Part shown: positions 45,789 to 57,922 of the stretch, piece after piece
How the letters are laid out: each line of letters begins with the position of its first letter
Numbering within the stretch: position 1 is the stretch's first letter
Notes under the pieces: model-generated
What the model was told of the DNA's origin: nothing
Seen by the model: only the letters and a program-made list of their open reading frames with translations
Database searches by the model: none
Position numbers and translations under genes: made by a program
IMG/VR virus record: IMGVR_UViG_3300032236_002285
Location: 412,237-476,236 of that record
DNA: 64,000 nt
Direction: 5' to 3' (one strand)

Positions 45789-47885
45789 ATGGCAGGTAGA
45801 TCAATTGAAGATATTTTGAGACAACAGGCGGCTCAACGTCAAGCTCAAATTCAACAACAACAAGCTCAAGAAAGAGCTCTTCATGAACAAAGAGAAAGAG
45901 CAAGACAAGACTATTTACAAAGAATGAGAATGTTTGAAAAGCTTTCTAATACAAATCCAGCGGCAGCAGCATCTGCGGCAGCAGGTGGTCACACGACACC
46001 AATAATTAACGGTCATACTGAAATCATTTTATTCAGTACAACAGACTCATCTAACTGGCATTATGTAATACTAGATTTTCAACATGATACTATCAGTGAT
46101 TCTAAAGACACTGGAATTTCAAATTCACTAAATATAAATCACTATTATGTTATTGATAACACAGGTTATGTTGTAAAAATCAGTGATAACTATTTGTGTA
46201 TAAATGATAGCACTCATATAGTTAAAACTATTACTGGTTCATATGGTGTTCATGCTAAGAGTGATTTAGTTATCTTCTATGATGAGACTGCTGGTGAAAT
46301 TAATTACTTTGATGGTAAGGTTTTCTCTACATTTACTGGTGCTCCTGTTTCACCAAACTCATATAATTTAACAAGAGGTGGATATTTAATCATTGAATAT
46401 AGAAATTCAGATAATGGTGATATTACAATTTATAACTGGACACCTACTGATGGTTTAACATCTATTTATACGGATGTTTATTGGGGATTCACTGGTGAAT
46501 ACAATGGTATTGATGTAGACCCATCAGTTCCATTTTTCTGTGTTGAGATTAACCCAGGTGGTCATTGGAAAAAAATTAAAATTATAGGTGAACAAGGTGA
46601 TGCTAGATCTATACTTGATGTTGATGCTCTTAGTGGTGGTACAATGGCAAGTGGATATATTCAGTTTTATGGTGATAGTAAAGTAGAATGGCAGTTTAAT
46701 GCTTTTGGTGGTTCTGTAAGATATATTGGTAACTATGACTATAATACAGATACTTGGAAAACAACAAGACACAATACAACAGCTAACTATGTTAACCAAG
46801 AAAATGTTTTTCAATATTCTCCAATAGGAACACAATTTACATCTCCATCAAATGGTAAAGTAAACTTATTTCATGATGGTGCTAGTGGTAGCCAATATAA
46901 TATTGACCTATATAGACACTTAGATGTAATTTGGACAATTGATGGTGGCAACTACCTTACTTATTCAGTTAACAATACAACAACTTGGTCAAAAGGCGTT
47001 GACTTAAACGATGCTAGTCGTGATTATGGTAACAATACTTTGTATTGTGGTAAATCAATGTTCTTCCCTATGTGGTTGAACAATAGCTACCTTTCTTTAT
47101 TATGTTTAACATCTACACAATCTGTAGTTATACAAGCTGGTTCAACTACAGGATTAACCGGTAGTCAAGGTTATGGTCATATTCCAGGATGGTATAATGG
47201 CCAAAGATATGCTACATTTAGAGTAGGTGATTATTTTGGTATTTGGTTAGCTTATGCTACTAGTGATGTTTATAAAATTTATGATTATACAGGTAATAAA
47301 GTTGTATCATTAACAATGAGTGTTGGTACTTACCTAAACTATAGAGGTAATATAGCTGTTATAACAACACCAACTACTGATTATCTTTTTGCTGAAAGTA
47401 CATTAGGTGCTTCACCTTCTTACGCTACTTATTCAAATTTAGGTTGGAACGCTATAGGACAATCACCTGATTACTCTAGCACAGAAGATGCGTCACTTAT
47501 AATTAATTCTAATTTATCAACTGGTCAATTTAGAATATTCAAAAATCCAGGAGCTATTGATGGTACGGTGCCTTCTGGAAAGATATCTTACGCATTTGCT
47601 AGTACTACATATGTTGGATTTGTGGATGATAGTAGTGGTAGTGTTGTTGTTTATTTATATGACTCAGATGCTAATCTTTTACAAACAGCTGATCTTGGTG
47701 TATCATCTATCAATAACTGGTTTATAGTAGAAGATAGAATAAATCTTGAAAAAGATAATGGTTCTACAAAAACATTCTGGTATGTTTCTCCAACTAAGGT
47801 AGATACTAAAGTAATAAAAAATGTATCATCATATGATGTTTACTATGACAATTACAACTGGTGGGCTCAACAATCTTGGTGCTAA
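45789..47885 (+). CDS. Large beta-rich virion/tail-type protein with Q/A-rich N-terminus
   Basis: RQQAAQRQAQIQQQQ..AAAASAAAGG followed by a Y/W/T/S/N-rich beta region. Confidence 0.65.
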   Translation: MAGRSIEDILRQQAAQRQAQIQQQQAQERALHEQRERARQDYLQRMRMFEKLSNTNPAAAASAAAGGHTTPIINGHTEIILFSTTDSSNWHYVILDFQHDTISDSKDTGISNSLNINHYYVIDNTGYVVKISDNYLCINDSTHIVKTITGSYGVHAKSDLVIFYDETAGEINYFDGKVFSTFTGAPVSPNSYNLTRGGYLIIEYRNSDNGDITIYNWTPTDGLTSIYTDVYWGFTGEYNGIDVDPSVPFFCVEINPGGHWKKIKIIGEQGDARSILDVDALSGGTMASGYIQFYGDSKVEWQFNAFGGSVRYIGNYDYNTDTWKTTRHNTTANYVNQENVFQYSPIGTQFTSPSNGKVNLFHDGASGSQYNIDLYRHLDVIWTIDGGNYLTYSVNNTTTWSKGVDLNDASRDYGNNTLYCGKSMFFPMWLNNSYLSLLCLTSTQSVVIQAGSTTGLTGSQGYGHIPGWYNGQRYATFRVGDYFGIWLAYATSDVYKIYDYTGNKVVSLTMSVGTYLNYRGNIAVITTPTTDYLFAESTLGASPSYATYSNLGWNAIGQSPDYSSTEDASLIINSNLSTGQFRIFKNPGAIDGTVPSGKISYAFASTTYVGFVDDSSGSVVVYLYDSDANLLQTADLGVSSINNWFIVEDRINLEKDNGSTKTFWYVSPTKVDTKVIKNVSSYDVYYDNYNWWAQQSWC

Positions 47886-47892
47886 TAAAACT

Positions 47893-47923
47893 AAAAACCC
47901 TCTCAAATCGAGAGGGTTTTTTT
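47893..47923. terminator. Bidirectional terminator
   Basis: aaaaaccctctc-aaatc-gagagggttttt. Confidence 0.8.
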
Positions 47924-48194
47924 ATTTTAAAATATTATCAATCTTTTTATCACGTTCTTCTTCTAAATATTCATAAACCCAACCTGGGCAGTTTCCTTCT
48001 TCTTCACCTCTGAATGTATCTTCATTGATATCACATCCAGCAATATGGTCTTCATAACCATCTTCATGAGAAAACTTACAAGTATAACAATGCTTTGTTG
48101 CTTTATTAAAACAACACACTGGCTCATGTTTAGCCATCAAATCAGCATTTATATCTGTATGTGAACAATGGTCACACTTCCAAACTTGTTTCAT
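47922..48194 (-). CDS. Zn-finger protein, C-tag
   Basis: CDHC..HEPVC..CYTC; ends RDKKIDNILK. Confidence 0.7.
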   Translation of the reverse strand: MKQVWKCDHCSHTDINADLMAKHEPVCCFNKATKHCYTCKFSHEDGYEDHIAGCDINEDTFRGEEEGNCPGWVYEYLEEERDKKIDNILK

Positions 48195-49964: not shown

Positions 49965-50500
49965 AATAGTGCTTTTAATTTAATTGTTCTTTGTAATTGA
50001 ATATCATGTGGATACTTCTTTGCTTCTTTCAATATTACTGAAGCAACCCACTCTTCTAATGTTACTGACTTACCTTTGATATCTAACATACCATCTTTAT
50101 AAGAATACCAGTAACCATAAGAATCATCTGATATCATATCTTTATGAATATCATTCATATAAACCGTTATCCAAGAATCACCAAAAATAAATCTTTGAGT
50201 AAATACCGTTTTATCCTTTCTTTTCAAAGATTTCATTGCCGTAACATTCAACTCTAGTGACCAATCATTAAACACCCGTTCAATATGCTTCAACATCACA
50301 GATGGTCTTTTACTAAGTATTAATGTCTTATCAACACGACCATCTACATAATGAACCACATGATATGAATCTTCATCCCACTTAGTTAAGTAATCACCTT
50401 CTACTGCACGACTAACCGTTTCAGTTGAAATTGTAGAAACTTCTTCAAGCCACTTGCGAAGCTGAATATCTCTTTGCGAATTATGTATTTGTAAATCCAT
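49961..50500 (-). CDS. Hypothetical protein, C-tag
   Basis: Ends RTIKLKALL. Confidence 0.7.
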   Translation of the reverse strand: MDLQIHNSQRDIQLRKWLEEVSTISTETVSRAVEGDYLTKWDEDSYHVVHYVDGRVDKTLILSKRPSVMLKHIERVFNDWSLELNVTAMKSLKRKDKTVFTQRFIFGDSWITVYMNDIHKDMISDDSYGYWYSYKDGMLDIKGKSVTLEEWVASVILKEAKKYPHDIQLQRTIKLKALL

Positions 50501-50889
50501 TATATTCCTATTTGTTCTAATTTTTTATTTCTTAACCACTCATTATATAATGATTCAAATGCTTCATCATCCCATTGAAAACCAAAGATATAAGTTGAAC
50601 CACCACACCATCTTGACCAAACATCATAAAATAAATTCCAAGATTTAAATAACTTTTCTAATGACTCAGCTTCTTCCCTTGTAGTGTATAATTGAAAACC
50701 TGACTCAGATAAGTACATCATTAAAACATCAATCTTATGTGAACGGTTGCTCCAGTTTTCTAAGTACCACTCACCTTTCAAGTCTTTAACTTGTTGCTTT
50801 ATCTCAGGTAAATGATGGTCACAATATCCCTTTGTAACAATATCAAATACCTCAAAAGGTTTTAGTTTCCTAATTATACGCCAACTCAT
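50500..50889 (-). CDS. Hypothetical protein, C-tag
   Basis: Ends RNKKLEQIGI. Confidence 0.7.
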   Translation of the reverse strand: MSWRIIRKLKPFEVFDIVTKGYCDHHLPEIKQQVKDLKGEWYLENWSNRSHKIDVLMMYLSESGFQLYTTREEAESLEKLFKSWNLFYDVWSRWCGGSTYIFGFQWDDEAFESLYNEWLRNKKLEQIGI

Positions 50890-51158
50890 ATTCCTAACTT
50901 ATTTAGTTTTAAATCTCTTTCACCAGCCAAATCCACAAAACACTCAATTGGTACAAACTCTTCATGAAAGTAATAAGGACCTTTTAACTTAACACATATT
51001 CTATCCGGAAAATGAAAATCAACATCAGTTACTTTATATTTTTCACCTATGATTAAACGCTCATTATCATAATCACCACCTATATAACCAATAGAATAAG
51101 AATTTAACTTAACACAAGTTAAAATATCACCTATTTTGAAATCTTTATATGTTTTCAT
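50886..51158 (-). CDS. SH3-like small protein, C-tag
   Basis: IGDILTCV..LIIGEKYKV; ends RDLKLNKLGI. Confidence 0.7.
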   Translation of the reverse strand: MKTYKDFKIGDILTCVKLNSYSIGYIGGDYDNERLIIGEKYKVTDVDFHFPDRICVKLKGPYYFHEEFVPIECFVDLAGERDLKLNKLGI

Positions 51159-51544
51159 ATACCTAACTCACTTAATATTTTATCACGCTTAATCGCTTCA
51201 TCTGAATCAAAGTAAATATCACCACGAAGATAAAACTCCATCGTCTCAGTATAGTTTTGACCATGTTGTGATGAACGAAACTGAACCGTTAACCTCTTTG
51301 CTTTAGCAACCAAATCTGGACAATCCAATATCTTTGATTTTAACTGCTCACGAATATCCTTTTTAACCCAATTCATCAACTCATGTGTTAAACACGAACC
51401 GTTCATTGTACTGCGCTCAACTTCTTCATAAGCATCCTGATATCGTGTAGGTAATCTAAACTCTAAAGTATCAACCTGCCAAAACATCCACCAATACTTG
51501 CGGTAAACCGCATAACCCTTATTATGTTTTTTAATATAACCCAT
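51155..51544 (-). CDS. Hypothetical protein, C-tag
   Basis: Ends RDKILSELGI. Confidence 0.7.
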   Translation of the reverse strand: MGYIKKHNKGYAVYRKYWWMFWQVDTLEFRLPTRYQDAYEEVERSTMNGSCLTHELMNWVKKDIREQLKSKILDCPDLVAKAKRLTVQFRSSQHGQNYTETMEFYLRGDIYFDSDEAIKRDKILSELGI

Positions 51545-52043
51545 CTAATATCTTATTTAAAACATTATCTCTTCTTAAAGCAACATAGTCAAAGTATTCA
51601 TCTACCAAGCGAACCGTATAAACAAAACACGGCTTACCTAAACTATTACCACCTTTACCTTTAGCAGCACCTAATCTATACAATTCATCATCAGATAATA
51701 AACAAAATGAATTAATTTGACTATCTGAACAAAGGCATTGAAAGTAAGGCATATCTATCTTCTTGGTATATAAATCATGAAATTCTTTAGTAGTTTTATA
51801 ACCAGGTATCACCTCATGTAAAGTTTCTTCAGTATAACCCTTACGAATCCACTCAATTGAATTACAAACCAATCCATTGTAATACCAATACTTATCATAA
51901 TCAGTAATAATCTGAGTTGATTTAAAAACAATTTTACCAAGATACTCTTGACCAGGTATAAGTATCTCACCCCAATGAGCCGCCATTGATTTCTTACACT
52001 TCAATGTCAAAGATTCTCCTAATTTTGTTTTTTCTAAGTTCAT
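51531..52043 (-). CDS. Hypothetical protein, C-tag (start uncertain)
   Basis: LKCKK..LIPGQEY; RDNVLNKIL near end. Confidence 0.65.
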   Translation of the reverse strand: MNLEKTKLGESLTLKCKKSMAAHWGEILIPGQEYLGKIVFKSTQIITDYDKYWYYNGLVCNSIEWIRKGYTEETLHEVIPGYKTTKEFHDLYTKKIDMPYFQCLCSDSQINSFCLLSDDELYRLGAAKGKGGNSLGKPCFVYTVRLVDEYFDYVALRRDNVLNKILDGLY

Positions 52044-52116
52044 TTCTCAAAGTTTTAATTGTTTGCCTCATAGCACGAGCAAACGTTTCATCAGCTAATC
52101 CATTCATCCAACTCAT
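51994..52116 (-). CDS. 40-aa C-tag protein (not in ORF track)
   Basis: MSWMNGLADETF...LRKNKIRRIFDIEV*; ATGA-coupled to the ACP-like gene. Confidence 0.5.
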   Translation of the reverse strand: MSWMNGLADETFARAMRQTIKTLRNELRKNKIRRIFDIEV

Positions 52117-52403
52117 AAACCCAACTCTTCTATTTTCTTATTACGAAGATACGATTTAAATACCATCGGCTTTTTATTTCCTCCAATAAAAGCATCCACC
52201 ACTTCATCTGGAATAACAATGTCTAATCTTTTCTCTAGCTCCATTGCCAACTCAACACAATCTAAATCATCATAACCATTATCATTCCAAGTTTTATTCA
52301 TATCTAATGGATAACCTATCTTTTCATTAGCAACCTCCATCAAAATCTCTGGAGTTACCTTAACTATATCTGGACACTTTTCGATCATTTCTAATTCTGT
52401 CAT
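52113..52403 (-). CDS. Acyl carrier protein-like protein lacking the pantetheine serine, C-tag
   Basis: GYDDLDCVELAMELEKRLDIVIPDE versus ACP GxDSLDxVELxMxxE..F.IxIPDE; ends RNKKIEELGL. Confidence 0.8.
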   Translation of the reverse strand: MTELEMIEKCPDIVKVTPEILMEVANEKIGYPLDMNKTWNDNGYDDLDCVELAMELEKRLDIVIPDEVVDAFIGGNKKPMVFKSYLRNKKIEELGL

Positions 52404-52777
52404 AGTATTTGCTTTAATTTTTTATCTCTTATTTCTTGTAATAGTGAAGGTATATACTGACCCCACTTTATATAAATCTTCATCTTTTCAGCATCCCAAT
52501 CAAAATCATCAATTGATTTATAACTATTTTTGCCATATACCGCCGTGTGATGATTAATCAACATATCAATACACTCATTCATAAACACCTGACGAATTCC
52601 AATATCCGATATCTCACCAGCCCAATCTGTTAACTGCTTATGAAATTCAGACCACTCATTTAACTTTCTCATTCGCTTACTATGTTGACGGGTTTCTTTA
52701 AAGAATCTCCAAACTATTCCAACAATTACAAACAAAAACACTAAAAATAATGCCGCTTGTATAATCTTAAATATCAT
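52400..52777 (-). CDS. N-terminal TM protein, C-tag
   Basis: Ends RDKKLKQIL. Confidence 0.7.
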   Translation of the reverse strand: MIFKIIQAALFLVFLFVIVGIVWRFFKETRQHSKRMRKLNEWSEFHKQLTDWAGEISDIGIRQVFMNECIDMLINHHTAVYGKNSYKSIDDFDWDAEKMKIYIKWGQYIPSLLQEIRDKKLKQIL

Positions 52778-53067
52778 ATACCTAACTTATTTAACTTTTC
52801 TTGACGATTTATTAATTTAGTAATATCAACCAAATACCCTTTAGTAAAACAACCAGCAATAGTTAACCTAACACTCGTCATTTTATCCCAATCTATTGTA
52901 AATTCAGCATCATACTCTACCTTACCAAACACCACCTTAGGACCTTTATCTGAATACATATGAATAGTAATAATATCACCAATATCAAAATGATGATAAT
53001 AATGAACATCAGTATCTAAACAGATACTAACACCACCCTTCATTACTTCTAAATAATAAACCGTCAT
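52774..53067 (-). CDS. Small protein, C-tag
   Basis: Probable start ATG 53067, 6 nt after TATCTTTG; ends RQEKLNKLGI. Confidence 0.7.
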   Translation of the reverse strand: MTVYYLEVMKGGVSICLDTDVHYYHHFDIGDIITIHMYSDKGPKVVFGKVEYDAEFTIDWDKMTSVRLTIAGCFTKGYLVDITKLINRQEKLNKLGI

Positions 53068-53073
53068 AAAACA

Positions 53074-53105
53074 CAAAGATACGAATAATATTTTAAAAAA
53101 ACAAA
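53074..53105 (-). promoter_or_regulatory. Bacteroidota sigma70 promoter
   Basis: TTTG-N20-TATCTTTG. Confidence 0.7.
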
Positions 53106-53763: not shown

Positions 53764-54024
53764 ATGATAGAACACTTTAAACTAACAGATATAAATATAC
53801 AATCAAACGAAGGTAAATTACTAATGGCAGCAGTAGCCATTCTTACCTCTATCGATCATAAACATATCATCTCAGGTAGATGGGGTGGCACAATAACACC
53901 AGATACAGCAGTTAAACAAATAACAGAACTATCTAACAAAATCTACTACGAAGAAGAATACAAAGCAGAACAACAAAGAATCGAAAGAGATAATAAAATT
54001 AATAAGATACTAAGAAATGAGTAA
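53764..54024 (+). CDS. Small protein, C-tag
   Basis: RDNKINKIL near end. Confidence 0.7.
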   Translation: MIEHFKLTDINIQSNEGKLLMAAVAILTSIDHKHIISGRWGGTITPDTAVKQITELSNKIYYEEEYKAEQQRIERDNKINKILRNE

Positions 54025-54406
54025 TTTAACTAACAGGTCAGCGTGGCACGGTGCTGGTATTGCACAAATAACAGGGTCTCAAGGCTCTATAGGAATAACA
54101 GGCGCTAAAGGTACACCAGGTAACCAATTCCAAATAGAAGAACTTGAAGAACTACAAAAAAAGTATCATAACCGCTTTATCATTAGAATAGAATACGATG
54201 ATGTAGACTTATCTCCTACTAACCTAATAAAAGATACTCACGAAGTGAGAGTGTCTAAAGACACTACTACTACCAATAGAGAATATAAGCTCATACCTAA
54301 AAGTATTTCTAATATAGTAAACGAAACAGATAAATTCATACAAACTCTAATAGTAATGATTAGAGATGAAAAATTAGACAAAATCATCAATGGCAGAAAA
54401 AGTTAA
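54017..54406 (+). CDS. Protein with short Gly-X-Y run, C-tag
   Basis: GSQ-GSI-GIT-GAK-GTP-GNQ; RDEKLDKII near end. Confidence 0.7.
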   Translation: MSNLTNRSAWHGAGIAQITGSQGSIGITGAKGTPGNQFQIEELEELQKKYHNRFIIRIEYDDVDLSPTNLIKDTHEVRVSKDTTTTNREYKLIPKSISNIVNETDKFIQTLIVMIRDEKLDKIINGRKS

Positions 54407-55263: not shown

Positions 55264-55290
55264 TTATATACCTAATGACTCTAATTTATC
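55264..55290 (-). pseudogene. Orphan C-tag-coding remnant
   Basis: GAT AAA TTA GAG TCA TTA GGT ATA TAA (DKLESLGI*) directly after the stop of 55289..55534. Confidence 0.6.
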
Positions 55291-55534
55291 ATATACCTAA
55301 TGATTTTAGTTTTTTATCACGACTTTCGTCTAAGTTTAATTCTGTATCGCGCCAGTGAGCGTATAAACTCTTAGTTTGTAATTGCTTTTTAGAACATCTT
55401 TTACATATTCGGAATAAGGTATGCTGCTGCCAACGGTAGGTTGAGCTGTTTTGCTTTTTTACCACAAGAGAGCCAAAAGAATCGCGATCTGTAAAGTATC
55501 GCCAGTTGTGGCCTATTATTTTACAAAGTATCAT
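55289..55534 (-). CDS. DUF1660-like small protein, C-tag
   Basis: CKIIGHNW..CKRC; ends RDKKLKSLGI. Confidence 0.7.
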   Translation of the reverse strand: MILCKIIGHNWRYFTDRDSFGSLVVKKQNSSTYRWQQHTLFRICKRCSKKQLQTKSLYAHWRDTELNLDESRDKKLKSLGI

Positions 55535-56748: not shown

Positions 56749-57306
56749 TTAAATGTTATTATATCCCTCAACGGATTCTACTGGTGGTTTTCCAATCTCT
56801 TGTAGGAAATCGTTTAATCTATCGATGATTATCTCATCATCATGTATAATATCATAATCATTAAACAATTCTATATAATCTTTATTATAGAATAATAGCC
56901 AAATGTCACTAACTGGGTTATTATAAAGGTAAATATCACCAACAACCACCTTTGGAAAATGTTCTAACGATGTTAATTTATTATTTTTACAACTAAAATA
57001 ACCACCAACGGATTCAGGACAATCTTCCAAAGATGTTAATTGATTATAAGAACAATTAAAATTACCACCAACGTATTTAGGAGCACCTTCCAAAGATATT
57101 AGTTTATTATCAATACAATTAAAATCACCAGTAACCTTTCTAAACTTTAATGGTAGCTTTGCTAATCCTTTATTTTCTAAATCAACATTACCATCAACAT
57201 CAATCGAACCATCTTCGTTAATAGTATAATCTTCTATACCACAAATTTTACATATATCATCAATGTCATTTTCAATAAATGATTCATATAGTTTTAAGTA
57301 TTTCAT
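56749..57306 (-). CDS. LRR protein paralog A with CTS-like leader
   Basis: Probable start ATG 57306 (MKYLKLYESFIE); about 22-aa repeats VGGxFxCxxNxLTSLExxP. Confidence 0.85.
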   Translation of the reverse strand: MKYLKLYESFIENDIDDICKICGIEDYTINEDGSIDVDGNVDLENKGLAKLPLKFRKVTGDFNCIDNKLISLEGAPKYVGGNFNCSYNQLTSLEDCPESVGGYFSCKNNKLTSLEHFPKVVVGDIYLYNNPVSDIWLLFYNKDYIELFNDYDIIHDDEIIIDRLNDFLQEIGKPPVESVEGYNNI

Positions 57307-57310
57307 TATC

Positions 57311-57922
57311 TTATATATTATTATATCCTTCAACGGATTTCACTGGTGGCTTACCAATCTCTTGTAAGAACTCATTTAATCTATCAATGATAATGCTATT
57401 ACCACGAATAACATCGTAATCGTTGAGTAATTCAATCTTATCTTTATCCTTGAATAATTGCCAAATATTATCAACCGGATTATCATAAAGGTAAATATCA
57501 CCACCAACCTGTGGGAAATGTTCTAAAGATCTTAATTGATTATTACAACAATTAAAATAACCACTAACTGATCTAGGAGAACCAACCAAACTAGTTAATT
57601 GATTATGACTACAATCAAAACGATCACCTACCGATTCAGGACAACCTTGCAAACTAGTTAATCTATTGAAAGAGCAATAAAAACTACCACCAACATATTG
57701 AGGAGAACCCTCTAATGATGTTAATTGATTATTAGAACAATAAAAAGTACCAGTAACCTTACCGAACTTTAGTGGTAGCTTTTTTAATCCTTTATTATTT
57801 AAATTAACATTACCATCGACATCAATAGATCCATCCGAGTTTATAGTATAGTTTTTTATACCATACTTTTTACAGATAGCATCAATTTCATTAAATGATT
57901 CATATAGTTTTAAGTATTTCAC
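57311..57922 (-). CDS. LRR protein paralog B with CTS-like leader
   Basis: GTG start, MKYLKLYESFNE; one more repeat than paralog A; near-identical caps. Confidence 0.85.
   Translation of the reverse strand: MKYLKLYESFNEIDAICKKYGIKNYTINSDGSIDVDGNVNLNNKGLKKLPLKFGKVTGTFYCSNNQLTSLEGSPQYVGGSFYCSFNRLTSLQGCPESVGDRFDCSHNQLTSLVGSPRSVSGYFNCCNNQLRSLEHFPQVGGDIYLYDNPVDNIWQLFKDKDKIELLNDYDVIRGNSIIIDRLNEFLQEIGKPPVKSVEGYNNI

What the first reader, a model, noticed from the sequence alone, without database searches (positions are those of the whole stretch)
52113..52403. ACP mimic with Ser-to-Asp at the phosphopantetheine site
The conserved ACP motif DSL reads DDL (codons GAT GAT TTA), while recognition helix II (LDCVELAMELE) and IPDE are intact. 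Established: the Ser is essential for pantetheinylation and helix II binds partner enzymes. Inference: a non-modifiable, possibly phosphomimetic decoy that could sequester AcpS, Fab, Lpx or SpoT-type partners, or defence proteins that use ACP. It also carries the C-tag.
Basis: partly seen in the sequence, partly recalled or inferred. Interest (0 to 1): 0.68.

Follow-up and report, generated by a model that had tools for sequence, protein, structure and literature searches.

The report
Serine-less acyl carrier protein look-alike in megaphage
A 476-kb freshwater phage encodes a small protein with the acyl carrier protein fold and partner-binding helix, but an acidic residue replaces the serine that carries the cofactor, a change shared by a large family of uncultivated-phage proteins, so it probably binds proteins rather than carrying acyl groups.

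Summary
Window 52113-52403 (minus strand) encodes a 96-aa protein. Its residues 17-86 are predicted to fold as an acyl carrier protein (ACP). The ACP motif reads D45-D46-L47 (GAT GAT TTA) where ACPs have D-S-L.

It is not a sequencing error. Independent contigs and all 22 close homologues have Asp or Glu there. In an exhaustive profile search, every strong relative lacks Ser: D 76, E 45, other residues 12.

The family keeps the ACP helix II signature under purifying selection. It adds a conserved N-terminal extension. Nearly all members carry the C-terminal tag R-x-x-K-[LI]-x-x-[LI]-G-[IL], which also ends about 11% of this phage's ORFs.

The phage has no PPTase, no second ACP and no ACP-client enzymes. 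A natural strain variant has deleted the gene. One cultured jumbo phage, Pseudomonas phage Lu11, has an independent DDL version.

Best reading (inferred, not shown): a non-modifiable ACP mimic or adaptor that engages partners through helix II, most likely host ACP clients. The named targets (AcpS, Fab, Lpx, SpoT) are untested, and SpoT is unlikely. I rate it a new variant of a known kind, of moderate interest. The shared C-tag is the stranger feature.

The parts
52113..52403 (-). CDS of the 96-aa Ser-less ACP-like protein (P0001), stop codon included
   Evidence: ACP fold
52356..52403 (-). Family-specific N-terminal extension, residues 1-16 (MT-E-EMI--CPDIVKVT), outside the ACP core
   Evidence: VIA alignments start at model residue 14-18; M1, T2, P11 and K15 are conserved across the family
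52266..52268 (-). Codon GAT for Asp46, at the position of the phosphopantetheine-bearing Ser of the DSL motif
   Evidence: the family has D 76, E 45, S 34 and other 12 at this column
52224..52268 (-). Helix II, residues 46-60 (DLDCVELAMELEKRL), the ACP partner-recognition helix
   Evidence: DSSP helix 46-60 in the model; the most conserved columns are D45, L47, D48, V50, E51, M54, E57 and K58
52116..52145 (-). C-terminal tag, residues 87-96 (RNKKIEELGL). It continues helix IV beyond the end of the ACP fold
52400..52777 (-). Upstream 125-aa gene (N-terminal hydrophobic segment, C-tag RDKKLKQIL). Its stop overlaps the ACP-like start (ATGA)
   Evidence: a 46%-identical homologue sits at the same place in L003; no Pfam family
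51994..52116 (-). 40-aa micro-ORF whose ATG lies in the TTATGA that ends the ACP-like gene. It is conserved in L003, has a tag-like RKNKIRRIF, and overlaps the start of the next gene
51531..52043 (-). Downstream 170-aa tagged gene of unknown function, syntenic in L003
51686..52780 (.). 1,095-bp stretch absent from a contig of a second sample of the same study. It removes the 125-aa gene, the ACP-like gene, the micro-ORF and the first 119 codons of the 170-aa gene
   Evidence: joint 51685->52781 in run X2; the upstream ORF then ends ...KLNKLGIV*
47893..47921 (.). Bidirectional terminator-like hairpin at the end of the minus-strand cluster of small overlapping genes that holds the ACP-like gene
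   Evidence: gene order

Best explanation
Shown: the gene encodes an acidic protein (pI 4.4) predicted to adopt the four-helix ACP fold. The cofactor-bearing Ser is replaced by Asp. It belongs to a large, diverse family from uncultivated, mostly very large phages. In that family the site is Asp or Glu, the helix II signature (G-x-D-[DE]-L-D-x-V-E-x-x-M-x-x-E-K) is kept, and a basic C-terminal tag is attached.

Inferred: it cannot receive phosphopantetheine at the canonical site, so it is not an acyl carrier. It works as a protein-binding module. It uses the conserved helix II face to occupy the ACP-docking site of one or more proteins. These are most likely host enzymes that normally dock ACP, such as AcpS, glycerol-3-phosphate or lipid A acyltransferases, or Fab enzymes. 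The result would be an unproductive competitor, in the way surplus apo-ACP inhibits E. coli PlsB. The acidic side chain at the start of helix II may stand in for the phosphodiester of holo-ACP.

The C-tag, shared with about 11% of the phage's ORFs, gives it a common fate with the other small tagged accessory proteins: docking to a shared receptor, localisation or turnover. That fate is unknown.
For: - Fold and site.
- Asp/Glu as a family trait: all 22 close homologues. Among the best 172 sequences the column reads D 76, E 45, other 12, S 34, with every hit better than about E 1e-11 lacking Ser.
- The same trait in further megaphages of 344 and 436 kb.
- Helix II columns are the most conserved, E57 is invariant in 127 members, and the profile matches that of the Ser-bearing relatives.
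- dN/dS is 0.19-0.44 against moderately diverged homologues.
- The phage has no PPTase, no second PP-binding protein, and no AMP-binding, PlsC-type, FabA/Z or RelA/SpoT genes, so any ACP client would be the host's.
- The residues that pair with AcpS in E. coli ACP (D35, E41, E47) are kept as D45, E51 and E57 (bioRxiv 10.1101/2025.01.28.635281; alignment).
- Apo-ACP is a strong inhibitor of glycerol-3-phosphate acyltransferase and of growth (PMC3896788).
- The gene sits in a cluster of small overlapping ORFan genes typical of accessory or host-takeover regions.
- An independent Ser-to-Asp ACP-like exists in Pseudomonas phage Lu11.
Against: - No partner has been shown. The AcpS complex prediction gave no verdict.
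- The host is unknown.
- No conserved neighbour points to a target.
- The positions equivalent to E48/E49 are K58/R59, and E47A/E48A abolishes AcpS action on E. coli ACP.
- About 9% of family members have a non-acidic residue at the site, so a negative charge is preferred but not obligatory.
- The conserved N-terminal extension and the tag are not ACP features and may carry the real function.
- A closely related strain has lost the gene, so it is dispensable in nature.
- The best PDB match is a Ser-less ACP-fold subunit that acts as a structural piece, not a decoy (PMC7583250).
Confidence: 0.4

Rival explanations
1. It is a structural adaptor. The Ser-less ACP fold is a permanent subunit or chaperone of a phage, or phage-host, protein assembly and is unrelated to host ACP clients. 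ATPTT11 of the ciliate ATP synthase and ACP in complex I or NFS1-ISD11 serve as structural pieces in this way. The C-tag or the N-terminal extension would dock it.
For: - The best PDB hit of the family profile is ATPTT11 (6ynx_q, E 4.4e-7, 'GLDEFD' aligned over residues 7-86).
- ATPTT11 has the ACP fold with no phosphopantetheine (PMC7583250).
- The family adds a conserved N-terminal extension and a tag that ACPs lack.
- Non-acidic residues are tolerated at the site in about 9% of members.
Against: - No conserved neighbouring gene accompanies it across contigs.
- The helix II signature is conserved residue for residue as in true ACPs, which is more than a generic scaffold would need.
- It is lost in a natural variant along with unrelated small genes.
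Confidence: 0.27
2. It is a tag-delivered cargo whose ACP domain is incidental. The function lies mainly in the shared C-terminal tag (targeting, docking or turnover). The ACP-like body is one of many small domains recruited to that system and needs only to fold.
For: - 78 of 699 ORFs carry the tag, against about 1 expected.
- 109 of 124 Ser-less family members carry it, against 3 of 14 Ser-bearing ones.
- Tag residues R87, K90, L94 and G95 are as conserved as helix II.
- The other tagged proteins are ORFans.
Against: The surface-exposed acidic helix II residues are conserved across members below 30% identity, which folding alone does not require. Lu11 has a Ser-to-Asp ACP-like without the tag.
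Confidence: 0.15
3. It is a generic acidic mimic or chaperone, for example a nucleic-acid mimic or a chaperone for basic proteins, that exploits the ACP's negative surface rather than its specific docking face.
For: The core, residues 1-76, has 19 acidic and 6 basic residues, pI 4.05. Small acidic helical phage proteins often act as DNA mimics (general knowledge, not tested here).
Against: Conservation is concentrated in the exact ACP signature rather than in overall charge. No evidence for nucleic-acid-binding targets was found.
Confidence: 0.08
4. It is still a carrier protein, modified at another residue or by an unknown enzyme.
For: T38 (T or S in 108 of 127 members) and C10 are fairly conserved.
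Against: T38 corresponds to a conserved structural position of ordinary ACPs and is equally conserved in the Ser-bearing relatives. No PPTase, adenylating enzyme or acyltransferase is present in the phage. The canonical site is never Thr or Cys.
Confidence: 0.03

Closest known systems
Bacterial type II acyl carrier protein (AcpP; Pfam PP-binding PF00550)
   Same: Predicted four-helix fold (Z about 7, rmsd 2-3 A over about 66 residues). Acidic. Signature G-x-D-x-L-D-x-V-E-L-x-M-x-L-E and I-P-D-E. Helix II residues equivalent to D35, D38, E41, M44 and E47 are kept.
   Different: The pantetheine-bearing Ser is Asp (D or E in the family). The Pfam score is below threshold. There are extra conserved segments: 16 N-terminal residues and a 10-residue basic C-tag. 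The E48/E49 equivalents are K and R.
ATPTT11, subunit of the Tetrahymena thermophila type III ATP synthase (PDB 6YNX chain q)
   Same: Best PDB sequence match to the family profile (E 4.4e-7). It has the ACP fold and an acidic residue (Glu, 'LDEFD') at the Ser position. No phosphopantetheine was found on it (PMC7583250).
   Different: It is a eukaryotic mitochondrial structural subunit of 152 aa, has no C-tag, and is not viral. The likeness may be convergent.
Apo-ACP of E. coli as an inhibitor
   Same: An ACP that lacks the prosthetic group yet still docks on ACP clients. It inhibits glycerol-3-phosphate acyltransferase and stops growth (PMC3896788). This is the functional precedent for a non-modifiable mimic.
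   Different: Apo-ACP is a transient precursor that AcpS converts. The phage protein cannot be converted at that site and bears a negative charge there. Its inhibition of any enzyme is untested.
Pseudomonas phage Lu11 gp346 (AFH14884.1, annotated as a hypothetical protein)
   Same: A cultured jumbo-phage protein with an ACP-like C-terminal domain that reads G-V-D-D-L-D-R-I-E-M in place of D-S-L.
   Different: It is 140 aa with a long unrelated N-terminal part and no C-tag. It shares only about 41% identity over 39 residues, so the Ser loss was probably independent.
Canonical phage-encoded ACPs (PHROG 5934/4154), e.g. Yersinia phage fHe-Yen9-04 g153, Pectobacterium phage CBB_163, Achromobacter phage Motura gp339
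   Same: Small ACP-like proteins of large phages. They are the family's nearest annotated viral relatives.
   Different: Nine of the ten cultured-phage examples read here keep D-S-L, and none has the C-tag.

Membership tests
Acyl carrier protein / PP-binding (PF00550) | Four-helix-bundle carrier-protein fold | tested here: met
   AF2 pLDDT 84 with helices 18-29, 46-60, 66-72 and 83-93. All top 50 Foldseek hits are ACPs. VIA Z 6.3-7.4. This is a prediction, not a solved structure.
Acyl carrier protein / PP-binding (PF00550) | Sequence match above the curated Pfam threshold | tested here: not met
   PF00550 19.2 bits against a cut-off of 20.8; PF14573 22.5 against 32. The family profile does reach solved ACPs at E 2e-6.
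Acyl carrier protein / PP-binding (PF00550) | Conserved Ser of the D-S-L motif at the N-terminus of helix II (the phosphopantetheine attachment site) | tested here: not met
   The residue is Asp46 (GAT). It is D or E in all 22 close homologues, and non-Ser in every relative better than about E 1e-11.
Acyl carrier protein / PP-binding (PF00550) | Post-translational phosphopantetheinylation and acyl carriage | not testable with these tools
   Needs intact-mass analysis. The phage encodes no ACPS-type PPTase.
Acyl carrier protein / PP-binding (PF00550) | Acidic helix II recognition surface | tested here: met
   D45, D48, E51, E55 and E57 are present. D45, D48, E51, M54 and E57 are among the most conserved family columns. 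K58/R59 replace the E48/E49 positions.
Ser-less ACP-fold structural subunits (ATPTT11 type) | ACP fold with an acidic residue in place of the Ser and no cofactor | tested here: met
   The alignment to 6ynx_q shows D/E on 'LDEFD'. The paper reports no phosphopantetheine (PMC7583250). Absence of the cofactor on the phage protein itself is inferred.
Ser-less ACP-fold structural subunits (ATPTT11 type) | Stable incorporation into a larger protein assembly | not testable with these tools
   No partner was identified, and synteny gives none.
C-tagged small proteins of this megaphage clade | Motif R-x-x-K-[LI]-x-x-[LI]-[GL]-[ILK] that ends at or a few residues before the C-terminus | tested here: met
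   R87-N-K-K-I-E-E-L-G-L96. The tag is on 78 of 699 ORFs, against about 1 in N-terminal, middle or shuffled controls. It is kept in 109 of 124 Ser-less family members.
PHROG 5934 (phage 'acyl carrier protein') | Significant profile match | tested here: inconclusive
   E 1.3e-6, but only over residues 37-72 of 96. The cultured-phage ACPs read here mostly keep Ser.

The most novel reading that the evidence does not exclude
The Ser-to-Asp/Glu proteins are holo-ACP phosphomimics that megaphages use to jam a host ACP-dependent process: lipid or LPS synthesis, or an ACP-dependent defence or stress signal. The shared C-terminal tag is a targeting peptide. It would send about a tenth of the phage proteome, this mimic included, to one receptor. 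One example would be the inside of the HK97-fold procapsid for co-injection, in the manner of encapsulin cargo-loading peptides. Another would be a phage-built compartment or hub.
Probability: 0.12. Interest if true: 0.85.

Novelty: new variant of a known kind. Interest (0 to 1): 0.55.

Why it matters
ACP is one of the most connected proteins in bacteria, serving lipid, lipid A, biotin and lipoate synthesis. If phages field a non-modifiable look-alike, that would be a new host-takeover strategy aimed at this hub, and a ready-made probe or inhibitor scaffold for ACP-client enzymes.

The family is large: at least 120 clusters at 50% identity lack the Ser. My searches of the literature library found no description of it, and sequence databases label members simply 'acyl carrier protein', which is misleading for metabolic annotation of viral genomes.

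The family is also the only tagged protein examined here with a recognisable fold. The 20 other tagged proteins scanned against Pfam matched no family convincingly. That makes it the best handle for finding out what the tag does.

Lu11 gp346 offers a cultured phage-host pair (Pseudomonas putida) in which the Ser-to-Asp idea can be tested directly.

Tried and rejected
- **Complex prediction.** E. coli AcpS trimer plus this protein gave no verdict. It scored 0.60, but a control with AcpS replaced scored 0.60 as well. This is neither support nor evidence against binding.
- **Phage collection searches.** Megablast of 5 kb against the phage collection found no match. tblastn found only three weak hits.
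- **Related loci.** The search for related loci in IMG/VR with the family alignment found none. In bacterial genomes it found one MAG contig with a tandem ACP-like gene. No host emerged.
- **Synteny.** Only the close relative L003 shares neighbours. More distant contigs do not, so there is no conserved partner gene.
- **Family tree.** The tree of 138 members has too few columns to resolve. Only 11 of 135 inner branches are well supported. The number of Ser losses cannot be counted and no root is claimed.
- **Promoter scan.** 58 sites found against 55 expected, which is uninformative.
- **Pfam on neighbours and tagged proteins.** Ten neighbours and the ten largest tagged proteins gave nothing convincing.
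- **Literature.** Searches for phage Ser-less ACPs and for the C-terminal tag found nothing relevant.
- **Sequencing error.** Rejected.
- **Tag as a DNA-level repeat.** Rejected for its core, because synonymous codons vary as in the genome at large. Only the last codons (GGA ATA TGA) show nucleotide-level bias, consistent with an overlapping start for the next gene.
- **'Provirus' label.** G+C is flat at 0.27-0.33 over all 476 kb, with no host-like flank.
- **Alternative genetic code.** No suppressor tRNA was found and ORFs read through under table 11, so none was used.

Full report
**1. What is there**

Window 52113-52403 holds a 96-aa ORF on the minus strand. Its sequence reads ...NDNGY-D45-D46-L47-D48-CVELAMELEKRLDIVIPDE... 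The codons for Y44 to D48 are TAT GAT GAT TTA GAT, and D46 is window 52266-52268.

The window is the last 64 kb of a 476,236-bp IMG/VR virus record.
- It has 29.9% G+C, flat along its whole length.
- It has 53 tRNA genes and no suppressor.
- It has tail-fibre, prohead-protease, helicase and ribonucleotide-reductase genes.

It is therefore a tailed megaphage. Contigs that carry the stretch or close relatives come from freshwater metagenomes.

**2. Is it ACP-like, and is the Asp real?**

A single-sequence Pfam scan is just sub-threshold: PP-binding 19.2 against 20.8 bits. PHROG 5934 'acyl carrier protein' matches at E 1.3e-6.

A profile of the protein and 22 homologues hits dozens of solved ACPs at E 2e-6 to 1e-5. 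In the printed alignments 'GlDDLDcVEL' lies on 'GaDSLDvVEL', so D46 sits on the pantetheine-bearing Ser.

AlphaFold2 with that alignment gives pLDDT 84 and helices at 18-29, 46-60, 66-72 and 83-93. All 50 best Foldseek hits are ACPs. VIA-align gives Z 6.3-7.4, with rmsd 2-3 A over 63-69 of about 75 residues. Model residues from about 14-18 to 83-88 cover whole ACP chains. That Z range is modest for a small helical protein. The fold assignment rests on the uniform ACP hit list together with the sequence signature.

The architecture is an N-terminal extension (1-16), an ACP-like core (17-86) and a C-terminal tag (87-96) that prolongs helix IV beyond the end of the ACP fold.

The Asp is not an error.
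- The stretch is identical in the probable source run.
- Contigs from two other studies (about 95% and 90% identical) cover the codons with no listed change. The table was truncated, but the 99%-identical protein P0002 reads DD; it comes from a contig of 15,884 bp, the length of the contig that run X3 laid here.
- Three homologous DNA loci read GAT at the site.

**3. A family trait**

All 22 close homologues have D (19) or E (3) at the site.

An exhaustive profile search of 1.84 billion cluster representatives found 739 proteins at E <= 1e-3. I aligned the best 150 together with the 22 close homologues. The site reads D 76, E 45, S 34, with N, G, A, V and Q twice each and Y and I once each. 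Every hit better than about E 1e-11 lacks Ser.

Thr never occurs and Asn occurs only twice. The preference is therefore for a negative charge rather than for a generic helix-capping residue. It is not absolute, since about 9% of members are non-acidic.

Across 127 Ser-less members the most conserved columns are G43, D45, L47, D48, V50, E51, M54, E57 (invariant), K58, I62, I64 and D66. This is the ACP helix II and loop signature, and its profile is nearly the same as that of the Ser-bearing relatives. R87, K90, [IL]91, L94 and G95 of the tag are equally conserved.

Pairwise dN/dS against moderately diverged homologues is 0.19-0.44.

The nearest ESM-Atlas clusters are viral. Two further IMG/VR megaphages, of 436 kb and 344 kb, carry Ser-less tagged copies. 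The 344-kb one has two.

Of ten ACP-like genes read from cultured phages, nine keep D-S-L. Pseudomonas phage Lu11 gp346 reads D-D-L and has no tag, so it is probably an independent case.

A tree of 138 members is too poorly resolved to count the losses of Ser.

**4. Context**

The gene lies in a minus-strand run of small, mostly overlapping ORFan genes. The run starts near 53.7 kb and ends at a strong bidirectional terminator-like hairpin at 47893-47921.

The upstream 125-aa gene overlaps the ACP-like start by ATGA. A conserved 40-aa micro-ORF starts at the ATG inside the TTATGA that ends the ACP-like gene.

Synteny holds only in the close relative L003, a 214-kb contig. Further relatives have different neighbours.

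The phage has no ACPS-type PPTase, no second PP-binding protein, and no AMP-binding, PlsC-type acyltransferase, FabA/Z or RelA/SpoT genes.

A contig from another sample of the same study joins 51685 to 52781. This deletes 1,095 bp that include the ACP-like gene, and the upstream tagged ORF then ends ...KLNKLGIV*. The gene is accessory.

**5. The C-tag**

The motif R-[DEN]-x-K-[LI]-x-x-[LI]-[GL]-[ILK] ends 78 of 699 ORFs of 60 aa or more. One ORF has it in an N-terminal window, one in a middle window, and about 1.1 have it in shuffled tails.

Synonymous codons at the conserved positions follow genome-wide usage, so the core is selected at the protein level. Only the final Gly-Ile-stop is biased, towards GGA ATA TGA. 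This fits a Shine-Dalgarno-like element plus an overlapping ATG for the next gene.

The tag accompanies 109 of 124 Ser-less family members but only 3 of 14 Ser-bearing ones.

The larger tagged proteins and the neighbours have no recognisable domains. The ACP-like protein is thus the only tagged protein examined here with a recognisable fold. I found no description of this tag.

**6. Mechanism**

Shown:
- ACP fold (predicted).
- No Ser at the attachment site.
- Conserved helix II.
- Purifying selection.
- No phage-encoded ACP machinery.
- Dispensable in nature.

Inferred: the protein is not a carrier but a binding module that uses the ACP docking face.

The precedent for a decoy comes from E. 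coli. There apo-ACP strongly inhibits glycerol-3-phosphate acyltransferase and arrests growth (PMC3896788). D35, E41 and E47/E48 of ACP make the ion pairs with AcpS (bioRxiv 10.1101/2025.01.28.635281), and the first three are kept here. SpoT is reported not to bind apo-ACP (PMC3896788), which makes it a poor candidate unless the acidic residue mimics the holo form.

The rival precedent is ATPTT11, the best PDB hit. It is an ACP-fold subunit with Glu at the site and no cofactor, and it serves as a structural piece (PMC7583250).

My weights are: host-ACP-client decoy about 0.4, structural adaptor about 0.27, tag-driven cargo with an incidental domain about 0.15, generic acidic mimic about 0.08, still a carrier about 0.03.

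The one binding test available, AcpS trimer plus this protein, gave no verdict and is not used as evidence.

**7. Comparison and novelty**

By fold and signature it resembles an ACP. It fails the defining feature of the family, the Ser, and falls below the Pfam threshold. It should therefore not be annotated as an acyl carrier protein, as JGI does for its homologues.

It is a new variant of a known kind: a viral, tagged, Ser-less ACP-fold family. It is moderately surprising to a specialist and is directly testable, and Lu11 gp346 offers a cultured system.

The proteome-wide C-tag is the more unusual feature and deserves its own follow-up.

Read laying was given 1,601 letters. No alternative genetic code was used.

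Noticed in passing
whole genome G000; in the window e.g. 50500-50889, 50886-51158, 51155-51544, 52774-53076, 55289-55534 (all minus strand): A C-terminal motif R-[DEN]-x-K-[LI]-x-x-[LI]-[GL]-[ILK] ends 78 of 699 ORFs, about 11%, against about 1 in controls. It is clustered at 356-362 kb, 391-411 kb and 435-475 kb of the genome. It is selected at the protein level, and its function is unknown. It also occurs in other IMG/VR megaphages of 132-436 kb.
   Followed up: partly
ends of tagged genes, e.g. window 50886-50889, 51155-51158, 52400-52403: The ...L-G-I-stop endings prefer GGA ATA TGA: ATA 77% against 33% genome-wide, GGA 50% against 20%. This gives a Shine-Dalgarno-like GGA and an ATG that overlaps the stop, so the tag's last codons double as a translational-coupling cassette.
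   Followed up: partly
window 51686-52780: A contig from a second sample of the same study lacks these 1,095 bp. The joint has 1 base of microhomology. It is a natural deletion of three and a half small genes, starting exactly after the tag of the upstream ORF.
   Followed up: partly
window 51994-52116 (minus strand): A 40-aa micro-ORF is 29/40 identical in the related contig L003. It starts at the ATG inside the ACP-like gene's TTATGA, ends with a tag-like RKNKIRRIF, and overlaps the first 50 bases of the next gene in another frame.
   Followed up: partly
L011:1246-1668 (Pseudomonas phage Lu11, JQ768459.1 262034-262456): gp346, annotated as hypothetical, has a C-terminal ACP-like domain that reads GVDDLDRIEM, with Ser replaced by Asp. 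It is a cultured-phage counterpart without the tag.
   Followed up: partly
L009:4533-5153 (MAG contig CAMVAB010000040.1, labelled uncultured proteobacterium): A 206-aa protein has two ACP-like domains in tandem. The first has Glu at the site (LDEYD) and the second keeps Ser (FDSLH).
   Followed up: no
L054:1498-2043 (IMG/VR megaphage G002, 344 kb): A tag-like sequence (HREKRINEILEK) is followed in the same frame, with no stop, by a Ser-less tagged ACP-like domain. This may be a fusion of two tagged units or a mis-chosen start. The same genome has a second copy in L056.
   Followed up: no
window 54017-54406 (+) and 56749-57333 (-): One ORF has a short collagen-like Gly-X-Y run (GSQGSIGITGAKGTPG) and a tag-like end. 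Another has repeated leucine-rich 'NxLTSLE' units.
   Followed up: no
genome G000 218.7-272.3 kb: Most of the 53 tRNA genes lie in five dense arrays, with many duplicates (four Lys, four Glu, four Asp, three Gln). Aragorn also called two odd tRNAs with 4-base and 2-base anticodon loops.
   Followed up: no
window 47893-47921: A perfect 12-13-bp G+C-rich hairpin is flanked by T runs on both strands. It is a bidirectional terminator between the convergent ORFs at 47861-48013 (+) and 47922-48194 (-).
   Followed up: no
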